Positions 7,741-64,000 of a DNA stretch of 64,000 bases are shown here, piece by piece. The number at the start of each line of letters is the position of its first letter. The stretch's first letter is position 1. A model generated the notes under the pieces. The model searched no databases. It saw nothing but the letters and a program-made list of their open reading frames with translations, and was not told the origin of the DNA. Made by a program: the position numbers and the translations under genes. The stretch is taken from IMG/VR virus record IMGVR_UViG_3300023184_000025, positions 281,155 to 345,154 of that record. One strand, given 5' to 3'.

Positions 7741-8052
7741 TTAAATATTTCCTAATCCTACACGACTATAACCCAACTTGGATTTAATCTCTTTACGGTC
7801 TCGATTCTTCTCTGGTTTCCACGCCCGTGGGTCGACGGTTTCACCAGTTAGTTCATAACGAAAGTCTGGATCGTAAACCATATATCCCAGTTTGTTCCAT
7901 TTGATTACCCCATCGTCAAATAGAAAAATACAACCACGACACATACAGAAACTGGCACCGTTTTCACTCATTACATTACCATTCACCGTGCCAACATATT
8001 TGACCACATTACCCTGGTGCATTTCTTTAAGTGCTTCGTAGTAGTCAATCAT
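7741..8052 (-). CDS. hypothetical protein (103 aa)
   Basis: ORF overlapping the upstream gene by ATGA. Confidence 0.7.
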   Translation of the reverse strand: MIDYYEALKEMHQGNVVKYVGTVNGNVMSENGASFCMCRGCIFLFDDGVIKWNKLGYMVYDPDFRYELTGETVDPRAWKPEKNRDRKEIKSKLGYSRVGLGNI

Positions 8053-8279
8053 TCATCAACTCCAAAAACAAACTTGATACGATTGGCAACCACCTTGCCA
8101 TCATATCGGGTGTCGTTAGCAACATCTAAACATTCATTGATGATTAGTTCTGCGAATTTTTCTAAACGGATCTTATCCCATTCTTGAATTTTGAATCCAT
8201 CTTTGGGATCAAATTGGTATATCTTATCAGCAGATAAGTTAGCCTGTTCAGTAAGTTGTTTTATCTTCTGTTCGTTCAT
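8049..8279 (-). CDS. hypothetical protein (76 aa)
   Basis: ORF in operon context. Confidence 0.7.
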   Translation of the reverse strand: MNEQKIKQLTEQANLSADKIYQFDPKDGFKIQEWDKIRLEKFAELIINECLDVANDTRYDGKVVANRIKFVFGVDE

Positions 8280-8348
8280 AGTGGTCTTTGCGGTGTCCTA
8301 CCCTTGCGTCCAGAACACTTTTCTCTTTGCTTCATACAGCAATAACTC

Positions 8349-8993
8349 TTACTTATTGATTATACTGTCAACAAAGTCTAATAGCAATGCATAATGGCTA
8401 CCTTGATGATATTTGCCCTTCATCCAACTGTAACTATCATACCAATGCCGTTCACTTTCAGGATGACACCCTATTAATCCAATTTGGTTTTGAATTATGG
8501 CCATTGGATCACCATTGGCATAACGAGCAACAGTTTCGAACTTAGACTCGTCTCCAACTAAAGCGCACCCGTCATACCAAAACATGTTTGTGGGAGTGCC
8601 GTTCCAGGTTATACTGATATTTTTTGCATGCGGCCTGCGAGTATCAGTGTCAGGGCGTGTTATATACTGTACTGCATCAACGCCGTCTAGCAAATTAAAA
8701 TACTCACTGCCAGCCCAGTATGCACCCATACAGATACCAAGGTATGCTCCACCACGATTAACAAATTCCTGTATCCTAAGTCCGTTTTCTCTAGTTAAAA
8801 AATTAAAATTACTGGCATCTCCCAGACCACCGGGAAAACATATCATGTCAACATCGTCAAAAAAATCCGCCTCTAATTCCTGGCGGGTGAATATTTTAAA
8901 TGTGTAGTTTGACGAAAGGGCTTTAATGATACCGTTGCCACTTTGCACGGAGCAATATGGTTGGTGCAAAAATAATGCAATGCGACCGTTCAT
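8349..8993 (-). CDS. class I glutamine amidotransferase-like (BPL_N-type) protein
   Basis: FPGG, GGAYLGICMGAY nucleophile elbow, GCHPE. Confidence 0.75.
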   Translation of the reverse strand: MNGRIALFLHQPYCSVQSGNGIIKALSSNYTFKIFTRQELEADFFDDVDMICFPGGLGDASNFNFLTRENGLRIQEFVNRGGAYLGICMGAYWAGSEYFNLLDGVDAVQYITRPDTDTRRPHAKNISITWNGTPTNMFWYDGCALVGDESKFETVARYANGDPMAIIQNQIGLIGCHPESERHWYDSYSWMKGKYHQGSHYALLLDFVDSIINK

Positions 8994-54746: not shown

Positions 54747-55340
54747 TTAAATATCACGTGTAGTTATCACTTTGTCAGCAAGACCGTAATTAACTGATTC
54801 CTCTGCTGACATAAACTTGTCACGATCCATATCTTCGGTCAGCTGTTCAAAAGTTTTACCTGTTGAATTATGCTTGACATAGATTTCAGTTAACCGTTTT
54901 TTCAAATAGGTGATTTCTTTGTAGCTAATCTCAATATCGCTTTGCATGCCACGAGCGCCACCGCTGGGTTGGTGTATCATGTGACGTGCATTAGGCAGGA
55001 TCATGCGCTTGCCTTTGGCACCTGACTGTGCCAACAAACTTCCCATGCTACATGCTTGTCCCATTACAATGGTGTTGATATCGGGTTTAATAAATTGCAT
55101 GGTATCATAGATAGCCATACCAGCAGTGACACTACCTCCAGGGCTATTGATGTACATACTAATGTCTTTGTCTGGATTCTCGCTCTCAAGAAACAATAAC
55201 TGAGCAACAATTAAATTTGCCATTTGATCGTGTACTTCACCTTCAAGTAAAATTACACGGTCACGCAACAAGCGGCTATAGATATCATAACTACGCTCAC
55301 CTTTGCTGGTTTGTTCCAGCACCATTGGTACTAACGCCAT
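54747..55340 (-). CDS. clpP: ATP-dependent Clp protease proteolytic subunit
   Basis: DIYSRLL, YINSPGG, ACSMG (Ser), MIHQP (His), DRD. Confidence 0.96.
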
Positions 55341-55683: not shown

Positions 55684-56754
55684 TTATAATCCGCCAAATA
55701 AAAATACTCGGTCAAGATTTTTTATTTGATCTAACGCTTCTTGTGCTTGTTGATATTGACTGTGCTCGGGATCAAATACGTCAATCAACTTAAATTCATT
55801 GTTGGAGAATGTGCCCCAATTTCCAATTCTTCCATACTCAATTAAATCTACGCCCAGGTGCTGGCCCATGTTGTAAAATTCTAGCATCTCTTCAAAATTA
55901 TCTTTTTGAACTATCATTCGAATTTTAAACAGCATGCCATTTTGTTTTTTCTTTTCAGAAATCCACAATAATGCATGTTGTAGGTCGTCCCAGCGTCCAC
56001 CACGACGCAATTTTTCATATGTAGCAGACCTTGCGGCATCGGTGGTAATGGTAATCGATTTTACTTTTTCTTGCATGCTGCCAAGTCGATGCCAACGGTC
56101 TGGTACCAGTAAACCATTTGATTGTATAGCCAATTGTACGTTTGGAAAATCCTCTGTTGATATTGTGTTAACAAACGACAACAACATTGGACTGGCAAAT
56201 AATTCTCCACTGGTACTCACATGTAGTACGATTGGTTGATTAGTAGGTGTACAAAACAAATTTGATTTTAGTGTTTGCCCTAGGTGTTCTAGATGTTCAT
56301 TCTGTGCATCATTGTTTTTTATAATTTCCGTTCGACAACTTGGGCAACTGAGATTACAGGTTCGATCGCCAGATACCCAAATTTCTTTGGGCATAATGTA
56401 ACGAGATGCATCAAGAAGCAAGGGTTTAATATCATTGCCTACATTTTCTTTATCATTAAGATGATTGTGCCTTAAGATTCCGCAGGTGTTCTCGTTGCAA
56501 TAATCGTAGGTACCATCAATAATGCTCTGTCGCACATTGGTACTGTCAGCATTGGACAATATTTCGTCAAGTGAATTAATTAATAAATTTCCAACACTAG
56601 ATGGCATCCAGTCTTGACAACCACAGAGAGTTACTCTACCATCAAGTCCAATGCACATGCCCACAAAAGGACTAAGACAAACAAGATTTTGTAAATTTTT
56701 TGCTGGGAATTGTACTAGTGGCTTCTGTATCCAATTTAGTTTGTATTTTGACAT
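55684..56754 (-). CDS. radical SAM protein with N-terminal SPASM-like cluster
   Basis: CLSPF..CGC..C..C, then CNLSCPSC, SGELF. Confidence 0.8.
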   Translation of the reverse strand: MSKYKLNWIQKPLVQFPAKNLQNLVCLSPFVGMCIGLDGRVTLCGCQDWMPSSVGNLLINSLDEILSNADSTNVRQSIIDGTYDYCNENTCGILRHNHLNDKENVGNDIKPLLLDASRYIMPKEIWVSGDRTCNLSCPSCRTEIIKNNDAQNEHLEHLGQTLKSNLFCTPTNQPIVLHVSTSGELFASPMLLSFVNTISTEDFPNVQLAIQSNGLLVPDRWHRLGSMQEKVKSITITTDAARSATYEKLRRGGRWDDLQHALLWISEKKKQNGMLFKIRMIVQKDNFEEMLEFYNMGQHLGVDLIEYGRIGNWGTFSNNEFKLIDVFDPEHSQYQQAQEALDQIKNLDRVFLFGGL

Positions 56755-57443: not shown

Positions 57444-57524
57444 TTATACAGGACTATAGGGATTGAGAGGGCGATCCCACTCGCCCTGTTGTTCAGGATA
57501 CACTGGGTACTCGTTGTTTTGCAT
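57444..57524 (-). CDS. 26-aa micro-ORF MQNNEYPVYPEQQGEWDRPLNPYSPV
   Basis: Manual translation; fills the intergenic gap exactly. Confidence 0.5.
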   Translation of the reverse strand: MQNNEYPVYPEQQGEWDRPLNPYSPV

Positions 57525-57528
57525 TGAT

Positions 57529-59187
57529 TTACTTGCTGGATTTATAACTAGCGTAGCCTCGACCGTAGCCACTTTGTTGGCTTTCGTCTAGCCCTGGTAA
57601 TAGTCCGGCTTTTTTCATTGCGGCTTTGGTTGCTGGCCCAACATCCATGCCTGTGTCTACGATTTTTCCATCTTTTACTAAGAGAAAACGTGCTTGACTT
57701 CTAATAATAGCTGATCCGTTACTGCCACGATTTGGTGTAACACTTATATTACTTTCAGTGTCTAATACTGCTTTAACTGTGTGTCCAGCAACATCTATTG
57801 TGGTTAAAACAAAACCGTTGCCTAAATCTTGTTGTTGACTTGATTGTGCCATAGCACCGCCAGCGGCTCCAGCCAATGCGGCAGCGCCAAGTCCTCGCAA
57901 GAATCCTCTACGATTCATATCGGCTTCCGATACACCTTGAGGTTTATCGTTGGGGTTGGTGGTCAACACAAACTCTTTGCCCTTGTTGAACAGTTTGGCC
58001 TGCATTGTTAGTGCGGCGTTGTTCGCGGTAGCCTTGTCACGGAATGAGTAAGGGTTGCCTGCTTTGTCTCTAATGAGTTTTCCATTGAGCCGGATATACC
58101 AGGTACGAGTGTCAGGTGCTGGGGCCTGGCCTTCAGGATCTCTAGCACCACGCTTGAAGCCTGTGCGATTTGTATAATAGTCGTTGCGGGCTTCGTCTAA
58201 CTCTGCCTCCGCCACACCCTTCTTGGCAAAACGAGGATTGTGGAAAGCACCTTCGACGTACCATTCCATGTCATCATCATTTACTTTACAGTTCAATACT
58301 TGAACACTATAGCCTTGGTCATCTAACCAGGCCTGTGCTTGTTGTATCATTTCTTGTTTAGAAACGTCGCCACTGACGTCCAAATCGTTCCACCAACCAT
58401 CACCAACTAAGTCAGTCATTTGGTCATCCGTGTACCAACGTCCTGATTCGCCGCCGCCATTACCTGGAGCAAATTCTTTTAGGTTGCCTTGCTGGCCATA
58501 CATATCCATTAGTTGTCGAACATAGAAACTATAATGGCCACGACGGTCATTGTATTCTCTGTCTCCAAGCACAGTCTTTAATGCGGCCACAGCATCACTC
58601 ATTTCAGAACCATGCATTATTTTTAATGCGTCAGTAACCAGTGAATCAACTCGCTGTGAACTTTCTGCCATGTCTTGCTTTTTCTTTTTAGCAATAGCAA
58701 TTGCGGCTTGCTGTGCGGCATTGGCAGCTTCGTCCATGGCCTTCTTGAATCCTTTGCCAGGCTCCCATCCTGCGATAGGTTTGCACTTGCAACTATCACC
58801 AGGGCACTTGCAATTCTGCATGCCACATTGCATACAGCGTTCTTTGGACTCTTGTATGCTTTCATTTGGCACACAGTTTCTTACTGACTTGCCTGTTGTA
58901 GCACTTTTCTTTGTGCCTGCCGCATGATAGCCACTCCAGCAGTTGGTATAACCGTTGCTGTCTTTTTGGCCCTTCTTAATCTCATTGAGACTGCCATGTG
59001 TTTGACACATGCCACAGTCTTCACACACCATTTCCATCTCAACTGACTCGTTGTGTTTTTTCTTACCAGCACAATGAGCCTTTTGACTAAATCCTTTAGG
59101 GTGAGAGCAGTTGATACTGCTCTTGTATTTTTGACTCCACTGTTCCGCCACGCTCTGCGTGTTTTCAAATAAGGTATTGAGATTCAT
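57529..59187 (-). CDS. modular polyprotein-like protein, probable internal head/ejected protein
   Basis: Unrelated modules separated by SVAE, LNE, IQE, MDE, DMAE, LKE, GVAE, LDE, GVSE. Confidence 0.6.
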   Translation of the reverse strand: MNLNTLFENTQSVAEQWSQKYKSSINCSHPKGFSQKAHCAGKKKHNESVEMEMVCEDCGMCQTHGSLNEIKKGQKDSNGYTNCWSGYHAAGTKKSATTGKSVRNCVPNESIQESKERCMQCGMQNCKCPGDSCKCKPIAGWEPGKGFKKAMDEAANAAQQAAIAIAKKKKQDMAESSQRVDSLVTDALKIMHGSEMSDAVAALKTVLGDREYNDRRGHYSFYVRQLMDMYGQQGNLKEFAPGNGGGESGRWYTDDQMTDLVGDGWWNDLDVSGDVSKQEMIQQAQAWLDDQGYSVQVLNCKVNDDDMEWYVEGAFHNPRFAKKGVAEAELDEARNDYYTNRTGFKRGARDPEGQAPAPDTRTWYIRLNGKLIRDKAGNPYSFRDKATANNAALTMQAKLFNKGKEFVLTTNPNDKPQGVSEADMNRRGFLRGLGAAALAGAAGGAMAQSSQQQDLGNGFVLTTIDVAGHTVKAVLDTESNISVTPNRGSNGSAIIRSQARFLLVKDGKIVDTGMDVGPATKAAMKKAGLLPGLDESQQSGYGRGYASYKSSK

Positions 59188-59780
59188 TATGCTTCATCCA
59201 AGTAATCGGGTGTGGCCTGTATAACTTCTACTGTGTTTTCTCTACGATGAGCACAGTACATTTCACAGGCCATCTCGGCATGTTTGAGTGATTCAAACTT
59301 TGCACTATGTGGTTTGTTTTTAATTGTAATTCTGAAACCATCATCATCGTTGCCGTGGATTTTAATTTCATGTCCGTCGTCGGTGTTGATAGTTCTAACT
59401 GAAGGCCCAATATGATCAACATCCTGTGGTATTTTATCTTTGAGATCAGAGTCTGACTTAATTTCGTTTGAAAGGTCAGCCAGGTAGTCGCCTAGTTTTT
59501 TCTTAACTGTGCTGATTACATCTTCGGATGTGACCACTTCAGAGATAGTTTCTTGATCTTCGTCTTGTTCAACACTCTCTGCTCCAACAAAGTATCCCTT
59601 GGTAGGATGCTCAGGATCAGTTCTATTGGTTAATACATTGATACTTTTTGGTTTAAACAGCGCAGGAAGTTCAGGAACTCTCCTTTGTTGTTTATTAAGT
59701 CCAGATTTAACATCCACAGGGGTAATTTCTCCCTCGGCAATTTTATCCAGCTTTGCTAAAATATCTTTTAAATCGCTCAT
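59187..59780 (-). CDS. acidic hypothetical virion-type protein
   Basis: MSDLKDILAKLDKIAE N-terminus; start set at 59780. Confidence 0.6.
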   Translation of the reverse strand: MSDLKDILAKLDKIAEGEITPVDVKSGLNKQQRRVPELPALFKPKSINVLTNRTDPEHPTKGYFVGAESVEQDEDQETISEVVTSEDVISTVKKKLGDYLADLSNEIKSDSDLKDKIPQDVDHIGPSVRTINTDDGHEIKIHGNDDDGFRITIKNKPHSAKFESLKHAEMACEMYCAHRRENTVEVIQATPDYLDEA

Positions 59781-60217
59781 GCCCGCTCGCCTTTTAAGAA
59801 ACTTCTTAACATCCAACCATGCTTGGCCTGTGCGTCTAGGCGTTCAGCAATGAAGTTGGCAATGCCCTGGTTGTTTTCTTGTTCAGCACTGACAAATGTT
59901 TGATTCAATAAATCAATTAGGGCTCCGTTGTCAGAAAGCAACTCTTCAATCATCAATCGGGCACGTGGGATCTTGGTTTGTCCTTGTATGATAGACAGTT
60001 CTTGAAAACGTTCAAAACTGCCTGGACTGTATTCTTGTAAGGTGCGAATGTATTCAGCAATTCGATCAACTGCGCCGTACACCTCTTCATAGAAGTTGGC
60101 AAAGAAATCGTGGTATTGAGCAAAGTCAGGACCTTCCACATTCCAGTGAAAATTCTGTGCTTTGATACTCAAAGCATATTGTGTGGCCAGCAAAGTCTTT
60201 AAATCGTCCGATAACAT
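59777..60217 (-). CDS. dps: Dps ferritin-like DNA-protection protein
   Basis: NFHWNVEGPDF..YH..F..DRIAEYIRTL ferroxidase motifs. Confidence 0.92.
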   Translation of the reverse strand: MLSDDLKTLLATQYALSIKAQNFHWNVEGPDFAQYHDFFANFYEEVYGAVDRIAEYIRTLQEYSPGSFERFQELSIIQGQTKIPRARLMIEELLSDNGALIDLLNQTFVSAEQENNQGIANFIAERLDAQAKHGWMLRSFLKGERA

Positions 60218-60384
60218 TATTTCTTCCTAGGTTTTACAGGCATCATTTTTTGTGCGCTGTTGGCATATTTAGCTGGTTTAGTACTCTTAGTCCTAGTTAT
60301 CACTTCGCCCATTGGTTGAGCCACGGTAGCAATACCGCCTGAGCATGTGCCGCCCATACTTTCAGTTATTTCACGTAGTCGCAT
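60217..60384 (-). CDS. small basic protein (MRLREITES...)
   Basis: Shares the MR..E N-terminus with neighbouring genes. Confidence 0.55.
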   Translation of the reverse strand: MRLREITESMGGTCSGGIATVAQPMGEVITRTKSTKPAKYANSAQKMMPVKPRKK

Positions 60385-60670
60385 CGAATATAATCTCCAA
60401 GGTTTGTTGATCAACCCAGCGAGCCGATCCGTGTTCAATTCTGTGATTTTCTATCTGGAACGTGGCCAAGTTGGGCTTTAATGGCTCAAACTTAACTGTA
60501 TACATTCCTGCTGGTGCTTCTATTTGCAGTATTTCTTTTAGATACTCATTTACCCAATAGAATGTACGCTCAGCAAATAATTCATCGTTGACATAGATGC
60601 GATAAGAAGGTGGTAATCCTTGCCAGTCACAATGCAAATCAAATAAAGCTTTTACGAATTGTTTTTTCAC
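60371..60670 (-). CDS. hypothetical protein (99 aa)
   Basis: GTG start 4 nt after TAAATA. Confidence 0.6.
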   Translation of the reverse strand: MKKQFVKALFDLHCDWQGLPPSYRIYVNDELFAERTFYWVNEYLKEILQIEAPAGMYTVKFEPLKPNLATFQIENHRIEHGSARWVDQQTLEIIFDATT

Positions 60671-60697
60671 CCAGTATTTAGTTGGGCGTTAACTGAA

Positions 60698-60898
60698 CTA
60701 AACTTTGAGTTCTCTTGGCTGTCCAACAATAACATGCTTGTTATTGTATTGTTGTCTGAGTATTCTACGAGCCATTTCTGGTGTACGAGCCATTACTGTA
60801 GTATCAATGATGTTGATATAGCCCGTTTGTTGTAACTTAATCTTTACAACATAAGTTTTCATCTTGGTTTTAACAGGCTTAATTTCTTTGTAGCGCAT
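60698..60898 (-). CDS. small basic protein (MRYKEI...)
   Basis: ORF. Confidence 0.6.
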   Translation of the reverse strand: MRYKEIKPVKTKMKTYVVKIKLQQTGYINIIDTTVMARTPEMARRILRQQYNNKHVIVGQPRELKV

Positions 60899-60899
60899 A

Positions 60900-62270
60900 T
60901 TAGTGGAACATTAAAAACTGATTTTGTACATCGAGTCTTGTTGCACCCAAGTCGCCGTGGCCTGCTGGAAATACTACCACATTCCATTTAGGCTTGGGTC
61001 CTTCGGGGATACGATTCATTTGGTCGTATGTGATAATTGATCCTGGGTCAATATTGTATTTTGTAGATAACTTCTGTTTGAAGTTTTCCCATGCTTCTGG
61101 GCTTTTGACCTGTGTGCGGCCTTGTTCATCCTTGACATATTTGCCCTTGGCATCAGTCACAAACAAATCGCGGAACATGTCTTTGGGAATAGTCGGTGCG
61201 CCTTTTAGGTTCTTACCGGCATTTCTGTAGAGTTCAACTTTCTTGACTTCTCGACTCTTGGCACCACCATCACTGAAGTTGGGTAATGTATTAGACGGCG
61301 TGTTTGGATCAGTTACTGGATCTCCCATTTTGCTGTAGAAGTAAAAACGTACATCTGGGTTGTTGAGTTGCACTTTCTTACTAAGGTCCCAGTACTCTTT
61401 AGAGAAAAAGTCGCCAGCATCATGAATGCGCACCAGCAACTTGATGCCATTTTTGTCTGCCAGTGCTTTTGTTCGTTTGATTTCTGCGTCAAACATTGCC
61501 ATGTACTCATCAGGGTGATTAACCAAGAAGTTCAATGCTTGTGCGGCCGACATAGATGCGGCAGGGAACATAACGTAGCCGCCTTTTCTAGCATAACAGA
61601 ACAGTTGACATTCGCCTGCACCCGGGCATGTGGTAATTTCCACAAACTCTCCGGTGTCTTCATCCACAACAATACCACTTAGTGCTGGTAGTGTCAAGTC
61701 GTATGTGATGGCACCTTCTTTTTTACTCTTGCTCATCTTGGCATTTGATCCAAGGATTGCCCTGGGCGGTGTAGTAATTTGACGCTTTAGATCTTCCAAG
61801 TCCCATTCTTCTGTACCATCGTCTTTGGTAATGGCTTTGACATTGCTACCGTGAATAATAGGCTTAAAGCGATCTTGTTTGGTTTTTGTACCTGTTTTAA
61901 TTCGAGTTAGGTAATCCTGCATGTCTTGCTTAGACCATGACTTCTGTGGAGCATTTAACTTGATTGCTTCCGCCACACCGTTATCTGTGCCAATGTAGTG
62001 ATGATTGTGTACTTTGTAGCCTTGTTTACGATACCAATTGACAGCAGTATTAACAGCAGATTCACGATCTAATGCACGTACCTTGGCCTTGCGTTGTTTT
62101 AGTTCTTGACGTTGTGTCACAGCTGGACTGTGAGGATCACTGACAGTGACAGCAACTATGTGCTTGTCAAAGTTATGCTCAAGTTCTTCACTGACACCGG
62201 TGTTCTCAATATGCAAAGGTTTTACTTTGAATCCGCCCAGGGTAGTTTCTTGAAGTTCGTTAAATCTCAT
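60900..62270 (-). CDS. modular protein with C-terminal GP88-like (atypical radical SAM) domain
   Basis: MRFNELQE, GVSE and GVAE modules; TCPGAGECQLFCYARKG, RIHDAGDF, FYFYSK. Confidence 0.65.
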   Translation of the reverse strand: MRFNELQETTLGGFKVKPLHIENTGVSEELEHNFDKHIVAVTVSDPHSPAVTQRQELKQRKAKVRALDRESAVNTAVNWYRKQGYKVHNHHYIGTDNGVAEAIKLNAPQKSWSKQDMQDYLTRIKTGTKTKQDRFKPIIHGSNVKAITKDDGTEEWDLEDLKRQITTPPRAILGSNAKMSKSKKEGAITYDLTLPALSGIVVDEDTGEFVEITTCPGAGECQLFCYARKGGYVMFPAASMSAAQALNFLVNHPDEYMAMFDAEIKRTKALADKNGIKLLVRIHDAGDFFSKEYWDLSKKVQLNNPDVRFYFYSKMGDPVTDPNTPSNTLPNFSDGGAKSREVKKVELYRNAGKNLKGAPTIPKDMFRDLFVTDAKGKYVKDEQGRTQVKSPEAWENFKQKLSTKYNIDPGSIITYDQMNRIPEGPKPKWNVVVFPAGHGDLGATRLDVQNQFLMFH

Positions 62271-62323
62271 TTCTTTTTCCTATTTGCAAAGGCAATCTTT
62301 ATTAATTTACTTATGTTTTATTG

Positions 62324-62980
62324 TCAGATAAAGTTTGGATGATTGATAACTTGCTCTGCATATAGTTTATTGGTTTTTTCACCGGGGTGCATATTATCAT
62401 CTGCAAAATCTAACATTTGTGACATCCAGGAAGCATTGTCATCTGATAAAAATTGTGTTTTATCAAGCTGATTAAACAGCATTGGAAAACCTCGAGCTTG
62501 TTCCAAAAATCCCATGCCGTTTATTAATATCATTTTAGAATCATGTTGCTTGCAATAATTTTGCAACAAAATTAATTTCAACAGATCTTGTTCAATTTCT
62601 TTTCTGGTATTAAAAAAATTAATTCCAACTTCTATAATAGAGTTAGTTTCTAAATTGGTTTTTGTATTAGAGACCCGGCCACCGTTAAAAATACAAAAGT
62701 CAGTGGAGTTGTTCCTCCAAAACCAACGTCGTCGAGTTGATGTTGTTTGTATTATAACAACGTCATAATGTGTAGATAAAATTTCCTGTATTGCACGATA
62801 TAAGATTTCTTGGTTGCTAAGGCCGCCATAACTGATATTGGTAATAGAAACATTTGTTTTAGTGGATACTATGTTGTACCAACATCTAGGATCATCATGA
62901 TTTCCAACAATCTCTCCAAATCCGCAATAATCGCTAAACGAGCATCCTACTAACAAAATAGATTTTAAAGATGCTGACAT
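62324..62980 (-). CDS. SGNH-like protein
   Basis: LVGCSFSD, GLSNQEI, DNMHPG. Confidence 0.6.
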   Translation of the reverse strand: MSASLKSILLVGCSFSDYCGFGEIVGNHDDPRCWYNIVSTKTNVSITNISYGGLSNQEILYRAIQEILSTHYDVVIIQTTSTRRRWFWRNNSTDFCIFNGGRVSNTKTNLETNSIIEVGINFFNTRKEIEQDLLKLILLQNYCKQHDSKMILINGMGFLEQARGFPMLFNQLDKTQFLSDDNASWMSQMLDFADDNMHPGEKTNKLYAEQVINHPNFI

Positions 62981-63399
62981 TATTTTTTGCGACCAGCTTT
63001 CATGTTGGCACACCAGTGCGCCATGCGTTGTCTTTCGCCGGAACTGTTGGCAGCAATGCTACGCAACTTCGAAACTGATTGTTTGCAGTTGACACCCTTG
63101 CGTTTGGCCAGACCTTTGCGTCCGGGTTTTTTACCATCGGCAAAGTTTTCTTTCATAACCCAGGTGTCTGGAACTTCATGGTACCGGTCAACCCACATGT
63201 CATGTAACTTCTGACCACTGATGCTGTGAGTTTTTGCAATACGTGTCATAATTTTGTCAATACTATCGTACACTTGATCATCGCTGGCAGACTGCAATTT
63301 TTGTTTGCGAGCTATCAATGCTGCCTTGAGTTCCGCCACTGCTTGATGGTCTTTGCTGTGGTCCATGTTTTCTGATACAATAAATTCTTGTGCTCTCAT
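62980..63399 (-). CDS. modular virion-type protein (MRAQEFIVSE..., KENFADGKKPGRKG)
   Basis: Modules separated by E motifs. Confidence 0.55.
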   Translation of the reverse strand: MRAQEFIVSENMDHSKDHQAVAELKAALIARKQKLQSASDDQVYDSIDKIMTRIAKTHSISGQKLHDMWVDRYHEVPDTWVMKENFADGKKPGRKGLAKRKGVNCKQSVSKLRSIAANSSGERQRMAHWCANMKAGRKK

Positions 63400-64000
63400 G
63401 CTAGTCCAATCTTTCCTGGCGCCATTGGTCCAGTTGCAATTCTTTCACCACCATCAAAGTAACGTATTTCTACGGGCATGTCTGGCCAGTTTAATCTGTA
63501 GGCAGCCATGATGCGATGATTGCCTTCGTTGACCCAGGCTTCGCCATTGTAGGCCACCATGATATAGGGCAGGTATTCTTCGTTGGGGTTACTGCCCATG
63601 GGCGGCAATTTGCCAGTCTTGTCCATGTAGTCCATCAACCACTTTAGGTCATTTTTGCGCACATTCATTTGTTCGTTGCGCATACCAGGCAACGAAGCTA
63701 GTCGCATCACACGCACTCTAGGTGGAGTTCCAACCACACCAGCAGTGGTGCTACCCATGTAAGGAACACCGTAGCTGTTACGGCCTTTGCTCTTGGCATA
63801 GTCAATTTTATCTTGCAACCACTCTTCATTGGGTACGTCTACGCTTAGTTTGCCTTCCGCCACACCTTGCTTCTTCATATACTTCTTACGCAATTTTAAG
63901 TCTGCTGGCGTTGCTTTTCTGATTAAATTCAAATATTTGTTTACTGGAATTTCTTTTATCTCAATGGGTTTGATGCCTTCTACTCCAGGAATAGAATGAA
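63396..64000 (-). CDS. modular protein with C-terminal ParB-like domain (5' end outside the window)
   Basis: Frame open to the window edge; GVAE then PYIMV..NEGNHRIMAA ParB-type GxHR motif. Confidence 0.6.
   Translation of the reverse strand, partial: HSIPGVEGIKPIEIKEIPVNKYLNLIRKATPADLKLRKKYMKKQGVAEGKLSVDVPNEEWLQDKIDYAKSKGRNSYGVPYMGSTTAGVVGTPPRVRVMRLASLPGMRNEQMNVRKNDLKWLMDYMDKTGKLPPMGSNPNEEYLPYIMVAYNGEAWVNEGNHRIMAAYRLNWPDMPVEIRYFDGGERIATGPMAPGKIGLA

What the first reader, a model, noticed from the sequence alone, without database searches (positions are those of the whole stretch)
57529..64000. Modular head-protein cluster stitched by a GVAE / GGTGTGGCGGA(A/G)G joint
Seen: the identical 13-mer GGTGTGGCGGA(A/G)G occurs at 58206-58218, 61967-61979 and 63854-63866 in three different genes. 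Variants are at 57924-57936 (GVSE), 59142-59154 (SVAE) and 62186-62198 (GVSE). Each sits in frame at a boundary between unrelated modules, and GC-rich GTG GCG codons are kept in an AT-rich genome. Many neighbouring genes start MR..E. Known: T4-type prohead proteases cut internal proteins after Glu. Inference: these are polyproteins matured in the capsid into many small ejected effectors, and the conserved DNA joint doubles as a microhomology for module shuffling.
Basis: partly seen in the sequence, partly recalled or inferred. Interest (0 to 1): 0.75.

Follow-up and report, generated by a model that had tools for sequence, protein, structure and literature searches.

The report
In-frame joints shuffle phage effector modules
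An uncultured 345-kb lake phage strings unrelated protein domains into polyproteins using one six-codon joint (QGVAEG) that looks like a capsid-protease cut site, is kept nearly letter-for-letter as DNA, and marks where related phages have swapped domains.

Summary
GGTGTGGCGGARG occurs 3 times in the window and a 4th time just across the contig junction, all in frame on the minus (coding) strand within about 6 kb of a 345-kb genome (about 0.005 expected). In about 2.3 Mb of related IMG/VR contigs, GVAE sits in more than 140 unrelated protein contexts. About 70% use exactly GGT GTG GCG GAR, where codon usage predicts 0.8%. The conserved element is 18-20 nt (CAA GGT GTG GCG GAA GGC, QGVAEG). Protein and DNA homology between relatives breaks at the joints (4-fold and 27-fold enrichment). 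One 494-nt cassette, 97.6% identical, is bounded exactly by two joints. The polyproteins start with leaders such as MRAQEFITE, close to T4's capsid-targeting sequence MKTYQEFIAE, and the genome encodes a T4 gp21-type (S77) prohead protease. In nine contexts a curated-model Tat signal begins 2-6 residues after an x-x-E site, several with no Met, which implies cleavage there. Shuffling at the joint is shown. Cleavage is strongly inferred. Packaging and ejection are inferred by analogy, with no proteomics. It is not a classical head-gene cluster. I found no published description.

The parts
63852..63869 (-). Canonical joint CAAGGTGTGGCGGAAGGC (QGVAEG) between module 2 (ART-like lead) and module 3 (ParB/Srx fold) of the 452-aa polyprotein
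   Evidence: It shares 23 identical nt with the copy at genome 268 (L083:7938-7960 and 8400-8422). Homologue ranges break here.
61965..61982 (-). Canonical joint AACGGTGTGGCGGAAGCA (NGVAEA) in the 456-aa protein, between an N-terminal module and the GP88-like module
   Evidence: Relatives' matches start at aa 98-99. An X11 contig regains similarity exactly at 61967.
58204..58221 (-). Canonical joint AAGGGTGTGGCGGAGGCA (KGVAEA) in the 552-aa polyprotein
   Evidence: The upstream module ...RFAKK-GVAE is followed by at least 6 different modules in relatives.
57922..57939 (-). Variant joint CAAGGTGTATCGGAAGCC (QGVSEA), directly followed by a Tat-signal module
57847..57915 (-). Twin-arginine (Tat) signal NRRGFLRGLGAAALAGAAGGAMA, starting 3 residues after the GVSE Glu, 421 residues inside the ORF
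   Evidence: TIGR01409 scores 23.1 bits against a cut-off of 16.7. The same arrangement occurs in 8 relatives.
58663..58677 (-). Decayed joint QDMAE (CAA GAC ATG GCA GAA) before the SQRVDSLVTDALK module
   Evidence: Relatives have Q-GVAE before the same module. An X11 contig replaces 58660-59163 with 468 other letters.
59143..59187 (-). N-terminal leader MNLNTLFE|NTQSVAE| of the 552-aa polyprotein, including the SVAE variant at 59142-59154
   Evidence: Relatives' matches start at aa 13-15.
57529..59187 (-). 552-aa polyprotein: leader, Cys-rich KYK/PKGFSQKAHCAG module (aa 16-109), further modules ending VPNE|, AMDE|, DMAE|, NLKE|, GVAE|, GVSE|, GLDE|
   Evidence: Cyanophage homologues of the first module lie in structural-gene neighbourhoods.
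60900..62270 (-). 456-aa protein: leader MRFNELQE, small TTLGGF module, GVSE (62184-62201), GVAE joint, GP88-like domain (aa 175-342)
62247..62270 (-). Leader MRFNELQE
62980..63399 (-). 139-aa protein with leader MRAQEFIVSE (63370-63399), translationally coupled to the polyprotein upstream (ATGA overlap)
63396..64000 (-). C-terminal part of the 452-aa polyprotein (full gene is L083:7517-8875): MRAQEFITE leader, GNAT, joint, ART-like module, joint, ParB/Srx-like module. The ORF runs off the window end.
   Evidence: (GNAT 30.4 bits against a cut-off of 20.7)
60361..60384 (-). Possible leader MRLREITE of a small ORF (weak)
59187..59816 (-). 209-aa protein whose likely start is MSDLKDILAKLDKIAE|G (I-A-E site). 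Membership in the system is uncertain.
59777..60217 (-). Dps/ferritin-like gene with no leader, interspersed in the cluster; probably not part of the system
   Evidence: PF00210, E 3.8e-23

Best explanation
This is a hyperplastic accessory locus of an uncultured, roughly 345-kb freshwater phage of the T4 superfamily. It encodes proteins and polyproteins built for delivery and rapid re-assortment. Each starts with an 8-10-residue leader (M-[KRN]-x-x-[EDQ]-[FLI]-[ILV]-x-E, e.g. MRAQEFITE) that closely resembles the T4 internal-protein capsid-targeting sequence MKTYQEFIAE. Behind the leader, autonomous domains are strung together by a six-codon joint, (E/K)-Q-G-V-A-E-G. The domains include GNAT, an ART-like module, a ParB/Srx fold, a Cys-rich KYK module, a GP88-like domain and Tat-signal cargo. 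Proposed mechanism: (1) [inferred] the leader takes the precursor into the prohead core; (2) [strongly inferred] the phage's gp21-type S77 protease cuts after the Glu of the leader and of every joint (V-A-E|G fits the L/I-x-E| rule), freeing the modules; (3) [inferred] the modules leave with the DNA into the next host, and those that now carry an N-terminal Tat signal are sent on to the periplasm; (4) [shown as a pattern; mechanism inferred] the joint is also an 18-20-nt near-invariant DNA string (CAA GGT GTG GCG GAA GGC). Any joint-to-joint exchange is automatically in frame, so recombination between joints within or between co-infecting genomes deletes, inserts or swaps whole modules. Continual creation of junctions by such exchange, or gene conversion, keeps the synonymous positions identical.
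For: Motif statistics and strict in-frame placement: 89 of 89 exact and 56 of 57 one-mismatch copies in frame; 100 of 101 in an independent set. Codon fixation in non-homologous contexts: (GGT 92%, GTG 76%, GCG 81% versus 38%, 24%, 9%; the control motif KGFSQKAHCAG drifts), replicated on non-ascertained sites, 67 of 99. The two Gly codons of the element prefer different codons, GGT and GGC, so tRNA bias does not explain it. The conserved block is only -5..+14 nt. Shuffling: 165 module families in 89 polyproteins, with the top family having 17 and 18 partner families. Protein homology endpoints fall within 3 aa of a joint at 9.9% versus 2.3% expected. DNA breakpoints at 85% or more identity: 112 of 1079 within 10 nt versus 4.2 +/- 1.9 expected. 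L181 shares 97.6% identity over L083:7927-8420 only, between the joints at 7940 and 8402. Further blocks run 7938-8419, 8414-8868 and 8403-8892. Leaders: (152 leaders with peptide-only conservation), compared with the T4 IPII/IPIII N-termini read from NC_000866. CTS and gp21 rules come from PMC9026906. S77 protease and gp23 MCP are present, and the MCP propeptide has LLE|G and LKE|N sites. Cleavage: Tat signals begin 2-6 residues after x-x-E in 9 contexts. Eight score above the TIGR01409 cut-off, 4 have no Met, and one directly follows a leader. Domains are autonomous: GNAT, ParB/Srx. Joints lie in unstructured, low-pLDDT segments (weak). A second leader-gene set sits beside TerL, and cyanophage homologues sit among head and packaging genes.
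Against: There is no virion proteome, no N-terminomics and no cultured relative. Packaging and ejection rest on analogy. V at P3 is not in the published T4 consensus (L/I). GVAE is absent from this phage's known protease substrates (MCP, scaffold). The locus is far from the head genes, and no T4-type late promoter was seen. A second candidate protease, an M78/ImmA-like HExxH domain, lies in the cluster and inside some polyproteins. One 356-kb relative has no canonical joint. The protease-peptide docking gave no answer. The test of four-fold sites in vertically inherited joints had no power, so lasting selection on the DNA string cannot be separated from constant re-creation by recombination.
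Confidence: 0.6

Rival explanations
1. The polyproteins are cut at the joints, but in the cytoplasm of the producing cell by another protease. The best candidate is the ImmA/IrrE (M78)-like HExxH domain of the neighbouring 695-aa protein, which in relatives is fused into the polyproteins themselves (polyvalent-protein 'MPTase' autoprocessing). The products act, or are Tat-exported, during the same infection rather than being packaged.
For: There is an HELTH motif in L001:1375-3462. Atlas structure look-alikes include Peptidase_M78 and ImmA/IrrE-ArdC clusters (a lead only). The same NTase+HExxH protein heads 1333-aa and 2085-aa joint-containing ORFs in L085 and L018. MPTase autoprocessing is proposed for polyvalent proteins (PMC5512222). 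Tat export in the producer cell would need no packaging.
Against: The invariant P1 Glu with an aliphatic P3 matches the known gp21-family rule, not any known M78 specificity. The leaders match the T4 CTS closely. Most polyproteins lack the HExxH domain. The M78 assignment is below the reliable range (scores 0.86-0.87, no Pfam hit).
Confidence: 0.15
2. The nucleotide identity of the joint reflects a direct RNA- or DNA-level function, such as a translational pause at domain boundaries, a site for an RNA-binding protein or RNase, or a recognition site for a nuclease or recombinase. On this view it is not a by-product or tool of general recombination.
For: Synonymous fixation is extreme and sharply bounded to about 18 nt. 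The string contains GGAGG- or GGAAG-like purine runs. All copies are co-oriented with transcription.
Against: The flanks are unconserved, so there is no conserved hairpin or partner. There is no Rfam match. About 30% of joints carry synonymous variants that persist in many near-identical contigs (e.g. GGTGTAGCCGAA, 10 copies), so the exact string is not essential. No HNH or GIY-YIG nuclease or recombinase gene was seen in the cluster. Breakpoints of DNA homology sit on the joints, which recombination explains directly.
Confidence: 0.12
3. QGVAEG is only a flexible inter-domain linker in uncleaved multidomain ('polyvalent') proteins. Its DNA conservation stems from recombination, and no proteolysis is involved.
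For: Hydrophilic, Gly-rich context. Low pLDDT at joints. Some polyvalent proteins are delivered uncut (PMC5512222).
Against: Tat signals placed 130-610 residues inside ORFs, each starting right after an x-x-E site and several lacking a Met, make no sense without a new N-terminus. All non-synonymous joint variants keep Glu at the last position. Other module ends are also x-x-E: VPNE, KNE, LNE.
Confidence: 0.08
4. The repeated 13-mer is a chance, low-complexity or assembly artefact.
For: None beyond the short length of the motif.
Against: 0 in 100 shuffles. More than 120 IMG/VR stretches from roughly 100 datasets. The phage is present in lake metagenomes from at least 10 studies, 2017-2025. The reversed-pattern control gives 0 in five genomes.
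Confidence: 0.01

Closest known systems
T4 internal proteins (IPI, IPII, IPIII, Alt) with their capsid-targeting sequence, processed by gp21
   Same: A roughly 10-residue N-terminal leader with the same core (T4 MKTYQEFIAE|A versus MRAQEFITE|G). Cleavage after Glu in an aliphatic-x-E motif. A gp21-family (S77) protease is encoded. The genes are non-essential-looking, diverse, scattered away from the head genes, and lie in a plastic locus. Cargo includes enzyme types known from injected proteins (an ART-like module, as in Alt).
   Different: T4 IPs are single small proteins. Here up to 7 joints link unrelated domains in ORFs of up to about 1570 aa. The internal site is a fixed hexapeptide with fixed codons. 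Some cargo carries Tat signals. Packaging is unproven here.
Polyvalent proteins of phages and conjugative elements (Iyer, Burroughs, Anand, de Souza, Aravind 2017; PMC5512222)
   Same: Many unrelated effector-type domains (ParB, ART, GNAT, metallopeptidase) in one polypeptide, predicted to be delivered with the DNA, with highly variable architectures.
   Different: No uniform joint, no conserved DNA string at domain boundaries and no CTS-type leader is described there. Processing is attributed to in-chain MPTase domains, not a prohead serine protease. The typical MuF or portal fusion was not seen here.
PeSL promoter-terminator cassettes of T4-type phages (Arbiol 2010, PMC2839356; Comeau 2014, PMC4122927)
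   Same: Short conserved direct repeats in hyperplastic regions of T4-type genomes that act as crossover points for insertion, deletion and replacement of gene modules, with excised mini-circles demonstrated.
   Different: PeSLs are intergenic regulatory elements (sigma70-like promoter plus stem-loop) that move whole ORFs. The joint here is 18 nt of coding sequence with no promoter or hairpin. It moves protein domains in frame and has a second role as a peptide site.
Conserved glycine-rich motifs (GRMs) of T-even gp38 adhesins as exchange points (Trojet 2011, PMC3157838; Tetart 1996/1998 as cited there)
   Same: Conserved motifs inside a coding sequence separate variable segments, and genetic exchanges occur in or near them.
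   Different: GRMs form the structural core of one folded domain, and their order is fixed. Here the joint separates independent domains, is a linker and cleavage site, and the order and content of modules are free.
Viral polyproteins and giant-phage head proteolysis (phiKZ, 201phi2-1, SPN3US: S/A/G-x-E sites)
   Same: One translation product is cut at short repeated motifs ending in Glu by a gp21-related prohead protease. Many ejection proteins are matured this way.
   Different: In those phages propeptides are removed from individual proteins. Serial release of unrelated domains from a shuffled polyprotein, and DNA-level conservation of the site, are not reported (searches found nothing).

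Membership tests
T4-type internal (CTS-bearing, capsid-packaged) proteins | N-terminal capsid-targeting sequence of about 10 residues ending in L/I-x-E | tested here: met
   Leaders MRAQEFITE, MRAQDFIVE, MRAQEFIVSE, MRAHEFIVE and MRAREFITE compared with T4 MKTYQEFIAE. There are 152 such leaders in relatives. This is sequence likeness only.
T4-type internal (CTS-bearing, capsid-packaged) proteins | Encoded by a phage with a gp21-family prohead protease and a gp22/gp23-type head | tested here: met
   PF03420 85.4 bits, PF07068 333 bits, scaffold-like ORF between them.
T4-type internal (CTS-bearing, capsid-packaged) proteins | Protein present in the mature virion with the leader removed, and ejected into the host | not testable with these tools
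   No cultured relative and no proteome.
Polyvalent proteins (Iyer et al. 2017) | 2-15 unrelated conflict-type domains in one polypeptide of a phage or mobile element | tested here: met
   GNAT + ART-like + ParB/Srx in the 452-aa protein. Up to 7 joints per ORF in relatives.
Polyvalent proteins (Iyer et al. 2017) | Linkage to virion packaging (MuF or portal fusion, or virion-gene neighbourhood) | tested here: inconclusive
   No MuF or portal fusion was seen. The main locus is beside replication genes. A second leader-gene set is next to TerL.
PeSL recombination cassettes | Intergenic sigma70-like early promoter plus stem-loop terminator | tested here: not met
   The joint is coding, in frame in 89 of 89 cases, with unconserved flanks and no hairpin. 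It works like a PeSL but is not one.
Twin-arginine signal peptides | Match to the curated TAT_signal_seq model (TIGR01409) above its cut-off | tested here: met
   Own module 23.1 bits against 16.7. 7 of 8 relatives are above the cut-off and one scores 16.3.
Twin-arginine signal peptides | Located at the N-terminus of the exported chain | tested here: not met
   In the primary translation product they lie up to about 610 residues inside the ORF. The feature is met only if cleavage after the preceding Glu occurs, which is the basis of the cleavage inference.
gp21 (S77) protease substrates | Cleavage C-terminal to Glu in an L/I-x-E motif | tested here: inconclusive
   Joint V-A-E and leaders I-T-E, I-V-E and V-S-E fit if Val is accepted at P3. 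All variants keep Glu. Docking gave no answer. No biochemical test was possible.

The most novel reading that the evidence does not exclude
The joint is a dual-use genetic device: a coding-sequence cassette system. One 18-nt string is maintained both as the cut site that releases each domain inside the capsid and as a portable, frame-preserving crossover site. Through it a whole clade of lake jumbo phages trades injected effector domains, including in-frame mini-circle intermediates like those of PeSLs. In addition, cleavage unmasks Tat signals, so some virion-delivered proteins are re-exported to the periplasm of the newly infected cell. That route has not been described for phage ejection proteins.
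Probability: 0.35. Interest if true: 0.9.

Novelty: new variant of a known kind. Interest (0 to 1): 0.8.

Why it matters
It would show how large phages diversify their injected arsenal: by exchanging ready-made domains at a universal in-frame connector, not by inventing genes. It extends two ideas from the T-even model to polyproteins in abundant uncultured lake phages: CTS-guided packaging, and motif-mediated modular shuffling. It also gives a simple sequence rule (leader plus QGVAEG joints) for mining hundreds of candidate host-takeover or anti-defence domains from metagenomes, with their boundaries already marked. The leader and joint could serve as a toolkit for loading several cargo proteins into T4-type capsids. 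The Tat signals that become N-terminal only after cleavage predict a testable delivery route to the periplasm.

Tried and rejected
(1) megablast of the cluster against cultured phages found no match. tblastn of the three polyproteins found only remote single-module homologues. (2) Pfam and PHROGs scans of whole proteins were mostly empty. Scanning module by module gave GNAT. (3) The T4 late promoter TATAAATA is not enriched and is absent from the cluster, so expression timing is unresolved. (4) Rfam gave no match at E<=0.1, so a known RNA element is rejected. (5) complex prediction of the S77 protease with a 27-residue joint peptide returned 'no answer'; it counts neither way. (6) AlphaFold2 of the 452-aa polyprotein with a 24-row alignment gave mean pLDDT 48; only module 3 is usable. 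Foldseek E-values are weak (0.04-0.1) but coherent. (7) Breakpoints of HSPs at 97% or more identity: 29 endpoints, 1 on a joint versus 0.1 expected, so little power. The 85% threshold was decisive. (8) Four-fold-site divergence in vertically inherited joints: only 3-4 qualifying pairs, no power. (9) read laying served Logan contigs only. They fragment in the cluster and cannot show rare joint-to-joint deletions. Two suggestive module-boundary replacements were noted. (10) The absence of S77 and gp23 in G001 looked like counter-evidence. It is explained by the whole MCP-scaffold-protease block missing from that linear contig, whose DNA polymerase is 80% identical. (11) A Chi-like or homing-endonuclease site was considered. 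No nuclease gene lies in the cluster, and the motif is confined to these ORFs rather than spread genome-wide. (12) Repoila et al. 1994 (IP-locus polymorphism) is not held and is cited only through PMC12373910.

Full report
OBSERVATION. The window is the last 64 kb of a single 345,154-bp IMG/VR virus contig with 40.3% GC, estimated 99% complete. GGTGTGGCGGARG occurs at 58206, 61967 and 63854 on the minus strand, which is the coding strand; 100 shuffles gave 0 matches. A fourth copy lies at genome position 268, just across the contig junction. These four are the only GG.GT.GC.GAR strings in the genome in any frame. All four use identical codons and lie within about 6.1 kb. The stated variants are present and in frame: QGVSEA at 57924, QSVAEQ at 59142, TGVSEE at 62186. 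An identical contig that is not split at the junction (L083) shows that window ORF 63396-63932 is only the tail of a 452-aa polyprotein, L083:7517-8875. G000's ends simply lack 48 nt. An unbiased repeat search ranks the leader (31 nt, 3 copies) and the joint (4 copies, two sharing 23 identical nt, exactly 462 nt or 154 codons apart) as the top direct-repeat families of the cluster.

WHAT KIND OF PHAGE. The genome encodes a T4 gp21-type prohead protease (Peptidase_S77, 85 bits), a gp23-type capsid protein and a scaffold-like gene between them. Its family-B DNA polymerase is 42-51% identical to those of Phosso, Atu_ph07, Vibrio phage 2.275.O and the CBB/Rak2-like jumbo phages. Near-identical sequence is present in lake and freshwater metagenomes from at least 10 studies, 2017-2025. 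No cultured phage matches at the DNA level.

THE JOINT IN RELATIVES. Two protein-seeded scans of IMG/VR returned about 100 loci. Matched query ranges repeatedly begin at residue 13-15 (SVAE) or 98-99 (GVAE). In these loci GVAE occurs in 145 distinct flanking contexts, and 101 of them use GGTGTGGCGGA(A/G). Local codon usage (GGT 0.38, GTG 0.24, GCG 0.09) predicts 0.8%. After de-replication at 85% nucleotide identity, the joint uses GGT 92%, GTG 76% and GCG 81%. A truly homologous conserved motif in the same proteins (KGFSQKAHCAG) drifts freely at its Gly and Ala codons. Information content is confined to positions -5 to +14, consensus CAA GGT GTG GCG GAA GGC encoding (E/K)QGVAEG, and the flanks are at background. 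The two Gly codons of the element prefer different codons (GGT, then GGC), so tRNA bias is not the cause. All 89 exact 12-mers and 56 of 57 one-mismatch copies are in frame on the coding strand. Non-synonymous variants (DVAE, SVAE, GMAE, GVTE, GLAE, GVSE) all keep the final Glu. In this independent set 100 of 101 hits are in frame, and 67 of 99 non-ascertained GVAE sites are canonical. Single ORFs carry up to 7 joints and reach 1570 aa. Whole relatives carry 2-5 copies each, all on one strand and clustered, with 0 for a reversed-pattern control. One 356-kb relative has none.

SHUFFLING IS REAL. I cut 89 polyproteins at their joints, which gave 323 modules (median 121 aa) in 165 families. The commonest family has 17 different downstream and 18 different upstream partner families. 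For example...SF.N.RFAKK-GVAE is followed by at least 6 unrelated modules, and GSLNEFA.G.GGGES... follows at least 6 unrelated modules. Internal endpoints of protein homology fall within 3 residues of a joint Glu in 9.9% of cases, against 2.3% expected (maximum 3.5% in 200 randomisations). Left ends peak at -5 and right ends at 0/+1, which means alignments run through the shared QGVAE(G) and stop. Other enriched endpoints are also x-x-E ends: CVPNE|, CVKNE|, KLNE|F. At the DNA level, breakpoints of HSPs with 85% or more identity lie within 10 nt of a joint 112 times out of 1079, against 4.2 +/- 1.9 expected. The clearest single case is L181. It shares 97.6% nucleotide identity with this phage over L083:7927-8420 only, a block bounded by the joints at 7940-7957 and 8402-8419. 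There, module 2 sits behind an unrelated module in a different polyprotein. Other relatives share blocks 7938-8419, 8414-8868 and 8403-8892. In run X11 a contig replaces window 58660-59163 with 468 other letters between near-identical flanks. The replaced stretch runs from just after MNLNTLFE| to within a codon of QDMAE|, which is a decayed joint because relatives have Q-GVAE before the same module. Another contig regains similarity exactly at 61967.

LEADERS. Five genes in the genome start MRA.EFI[VT]E (or IVSE): three here and two beside the large terminase. They are translationally coupled to the gene upstream (TAATG or ATGA). T4 IPII and IPIII, read from NC_000866, start MKTYQEFIAE|A. The CTS is the first 10 residues, and gp21 cuts after L/I-x-E (PMC9026906). 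Nearly all complete polyproteins in relatives start with such leaders: MKAREFITE, MRANEFIVE, MKINDVLVE, MKTYQFITE, MNLNTLFE. Across 152 leaders the peptide is conserved, but the Glu, Phe and Ile codons follow background usage. This is an internal contrast that makes the joint's nucleotide fixation stand out. Homologues of the Cys-rich KYK module occur in T4-like cyanophages: directly after gp21-gp22-gp23 in P-TIM68, and between gp16 and gp17 in S-SM2. These have CTS-like N-termini, and the module follows a Glu.

EVIDENCE FOR CLEAVAGE. The module after the GVSE joint (window 57532-57924) begins with a Tat signal above the curated cut-off: TIGR01409, 23.1 bits against 16.7. Eight more contexts in relatives show the same arrangement. 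Examples are ...KEQGVAE|DLSRRGFLKG (L205)...QGVAE|GSLEE|IDRRGFLKG (L161)...NE|DIDE|DLSRRGFLRG (L053) and MRATEFVTE|MDRRGFLRG (L124, directly after a leader). Seven of the eight are above the cut-off, and the signal model starts at residues 1-7 of the predicted new chain. A Tat signal works only at an N-terminus, and four of these have no Met, which excludes internal initiation. This is the strongest sequence-based argument that chains are cut after the Glu. Which protease does it is inferred. The S77 family's known rule fits, and the MCP propeptide of this phage has LLE|G and LKE|N sites. However, an ImmA/IrrE-like HExxH domain in the neighbouring 695-aa protein, fused into some polyproteins elsewhere, remains a rival.

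MODULE CONTENT. In the 452-aa polyprotein, module 1 (aa 10-146) is a GNAT domain (PF00583, 30.4 bits against 20.7). Module 2 (aa 147-300, YLWHGSR...) has only Arr/ART-like look-alikes and is a lead. Module 3 (aa 301-452, NEGNHR) matches ParB/sulfiredoxin/KorB/Noc folds, probability 0.97-1.0. The 456-aa protein carries a GP88-like domain. These domain types are typical of delivered 'polyvalent' proteins (PMC5512222) and of T4 Alt.

INTERPRETATION AND LIMITS. Four things are shown: the motif, its frame, its codon fixation, and its role as the boundary and breakpoint of exchanged modules. Cleavage after the joint Glu is strongly inferred. Leader-guided packaging, in-capsid maturation by the S77 protease, ejection, and Tat re-export in the next host are inferred by analogy. 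Why the DNA string is fixed has two possible answers. Recombination may continually recreate junctions from identical strings, consistent with about 30% of joints carrying stable synonymous variants. Alternatively there may be direct selection on the string. The test that could separate these had no power. The label 'head-protein cluster' is not justified: the locus lies beside DNA polymerase, ClpP and radical-SAM genes and contains leaderless genes.

COMPARISON AND NOVELTY. The system combines known themes: the T4 CTS and internal proteins, gp21-type maturation, polyvalent proteins, and PeSL- or GRM-type motif-mediated shuffling (PMC2839356, PMC4122927, PMC3157838). It differs in using one in-frame hexapeptide and 18-nt string as both the processing site and the exchange site of multi-domain polyproteins, and in the Tat signals that only become N-terminal after cleavage. 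Text searches for GVAE plus phage, and for polyprotein plus prohead protease plus jumbo phage, found nothing relevant. I rate it a new variant of a known kind, with high interest.

Noticed in passing
G000 about 193.3-194.4 kb (L003:1501-2649, minus strand): The major capsid gene has a single in-frame TAA at codon 302 (...TTEGTF*APTNTKF...), and the conserved gp23 C-terminal region continues in the same frame. Relatives G006 and G002 have an uninterrupted 398-405-aa frame. It is an assembly error or a defective variant in the population.
   Followed up: partly
window 54747-55340 (-) and L001:7311-9602 (-): The phage encodes its own ClpP proteolytic subunit and a 763-aa ClpA/ClpB-like AAA+ chaperone, one on each side of the polyprotein cluster. 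A radical-SAM protein (55684-56754) and a Dps/ferritin (59777-60217) lie alongside.
   Followed up: no
window 57847-57915 (-); L205, L161, L053, L124, L128, L031, L015, L021: Tat signal peptides lie deep inside polyproteins, or directly behind CTS-like leaders, always 2-6 residues after an x-x-E site. This predicts virion-delivered or processed proteins routed to the periplasm.
   Followed up: yes
L108:3549-9292 (G000 153.5-159.3 kb), beside TerL (L108:1938-3506): A second set of leader-bearing genes (MRAREFITE, MRAHEFIVE, MKTLKDYLTE, MKTFAQYLIE), a 728-aa Lys/Gly-rich protein and a Sec-signal nuclease lie next to the large terminase. The 353-aa protein contains modules that occur inside GVAE polyproteins of relatives.
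   Followed up: partly
L108:4383-5155 (-); window 57529-57582 (-): There are conserved C-terminal tails. Both 155-kb leader proteins end ...FKGYPR*. The 552-aa protein ends GLDE|SQQSGYGRGYASYKSSK*, and in L058 the same tail follows a GVAE joint. These may be C-terminal propeptides or targeting tags.
   Followed up: no
contig ends of G000 (window 64000 / genome 1) compared with L083:8150-8200: G000's two ends abut inside the 452-aa polyprotein gene and lack 48 nt (16 codons) that are present in the otherwise identical contig IMGVR_UViG_3300023174_000044. The assembly broke inside the repeat-rich cluster.
   Followed up: yes
L181 (ORF of 344 aa, minus strand, containing 7861-8349): A leader is followed immediately by a joint (MRATEFIIE-GVAE-G...), and the last joint has decayed to GVVEST-stop. 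This shows joints forming and decaying at chain ends.
   Followed up: partly
G001 (IMGVR_UViG_3300032268_000986, 342,865 bp): This close relative (DNA polymerase 80% identical) is rated 99% complete, yet the whole MCP-scaffold-protease block is missing from the linear contig. The completeness estimate hides a missing essential module.
   Followed up: partly
window 57500-63400 in runs X3, X5, X6, X11: Logan contigs of four independent lake metagenomes break every few hundred bases across this cluster. That is consistent with a branching assembly graph caused by co-existing module variants.
   Followed up: partly
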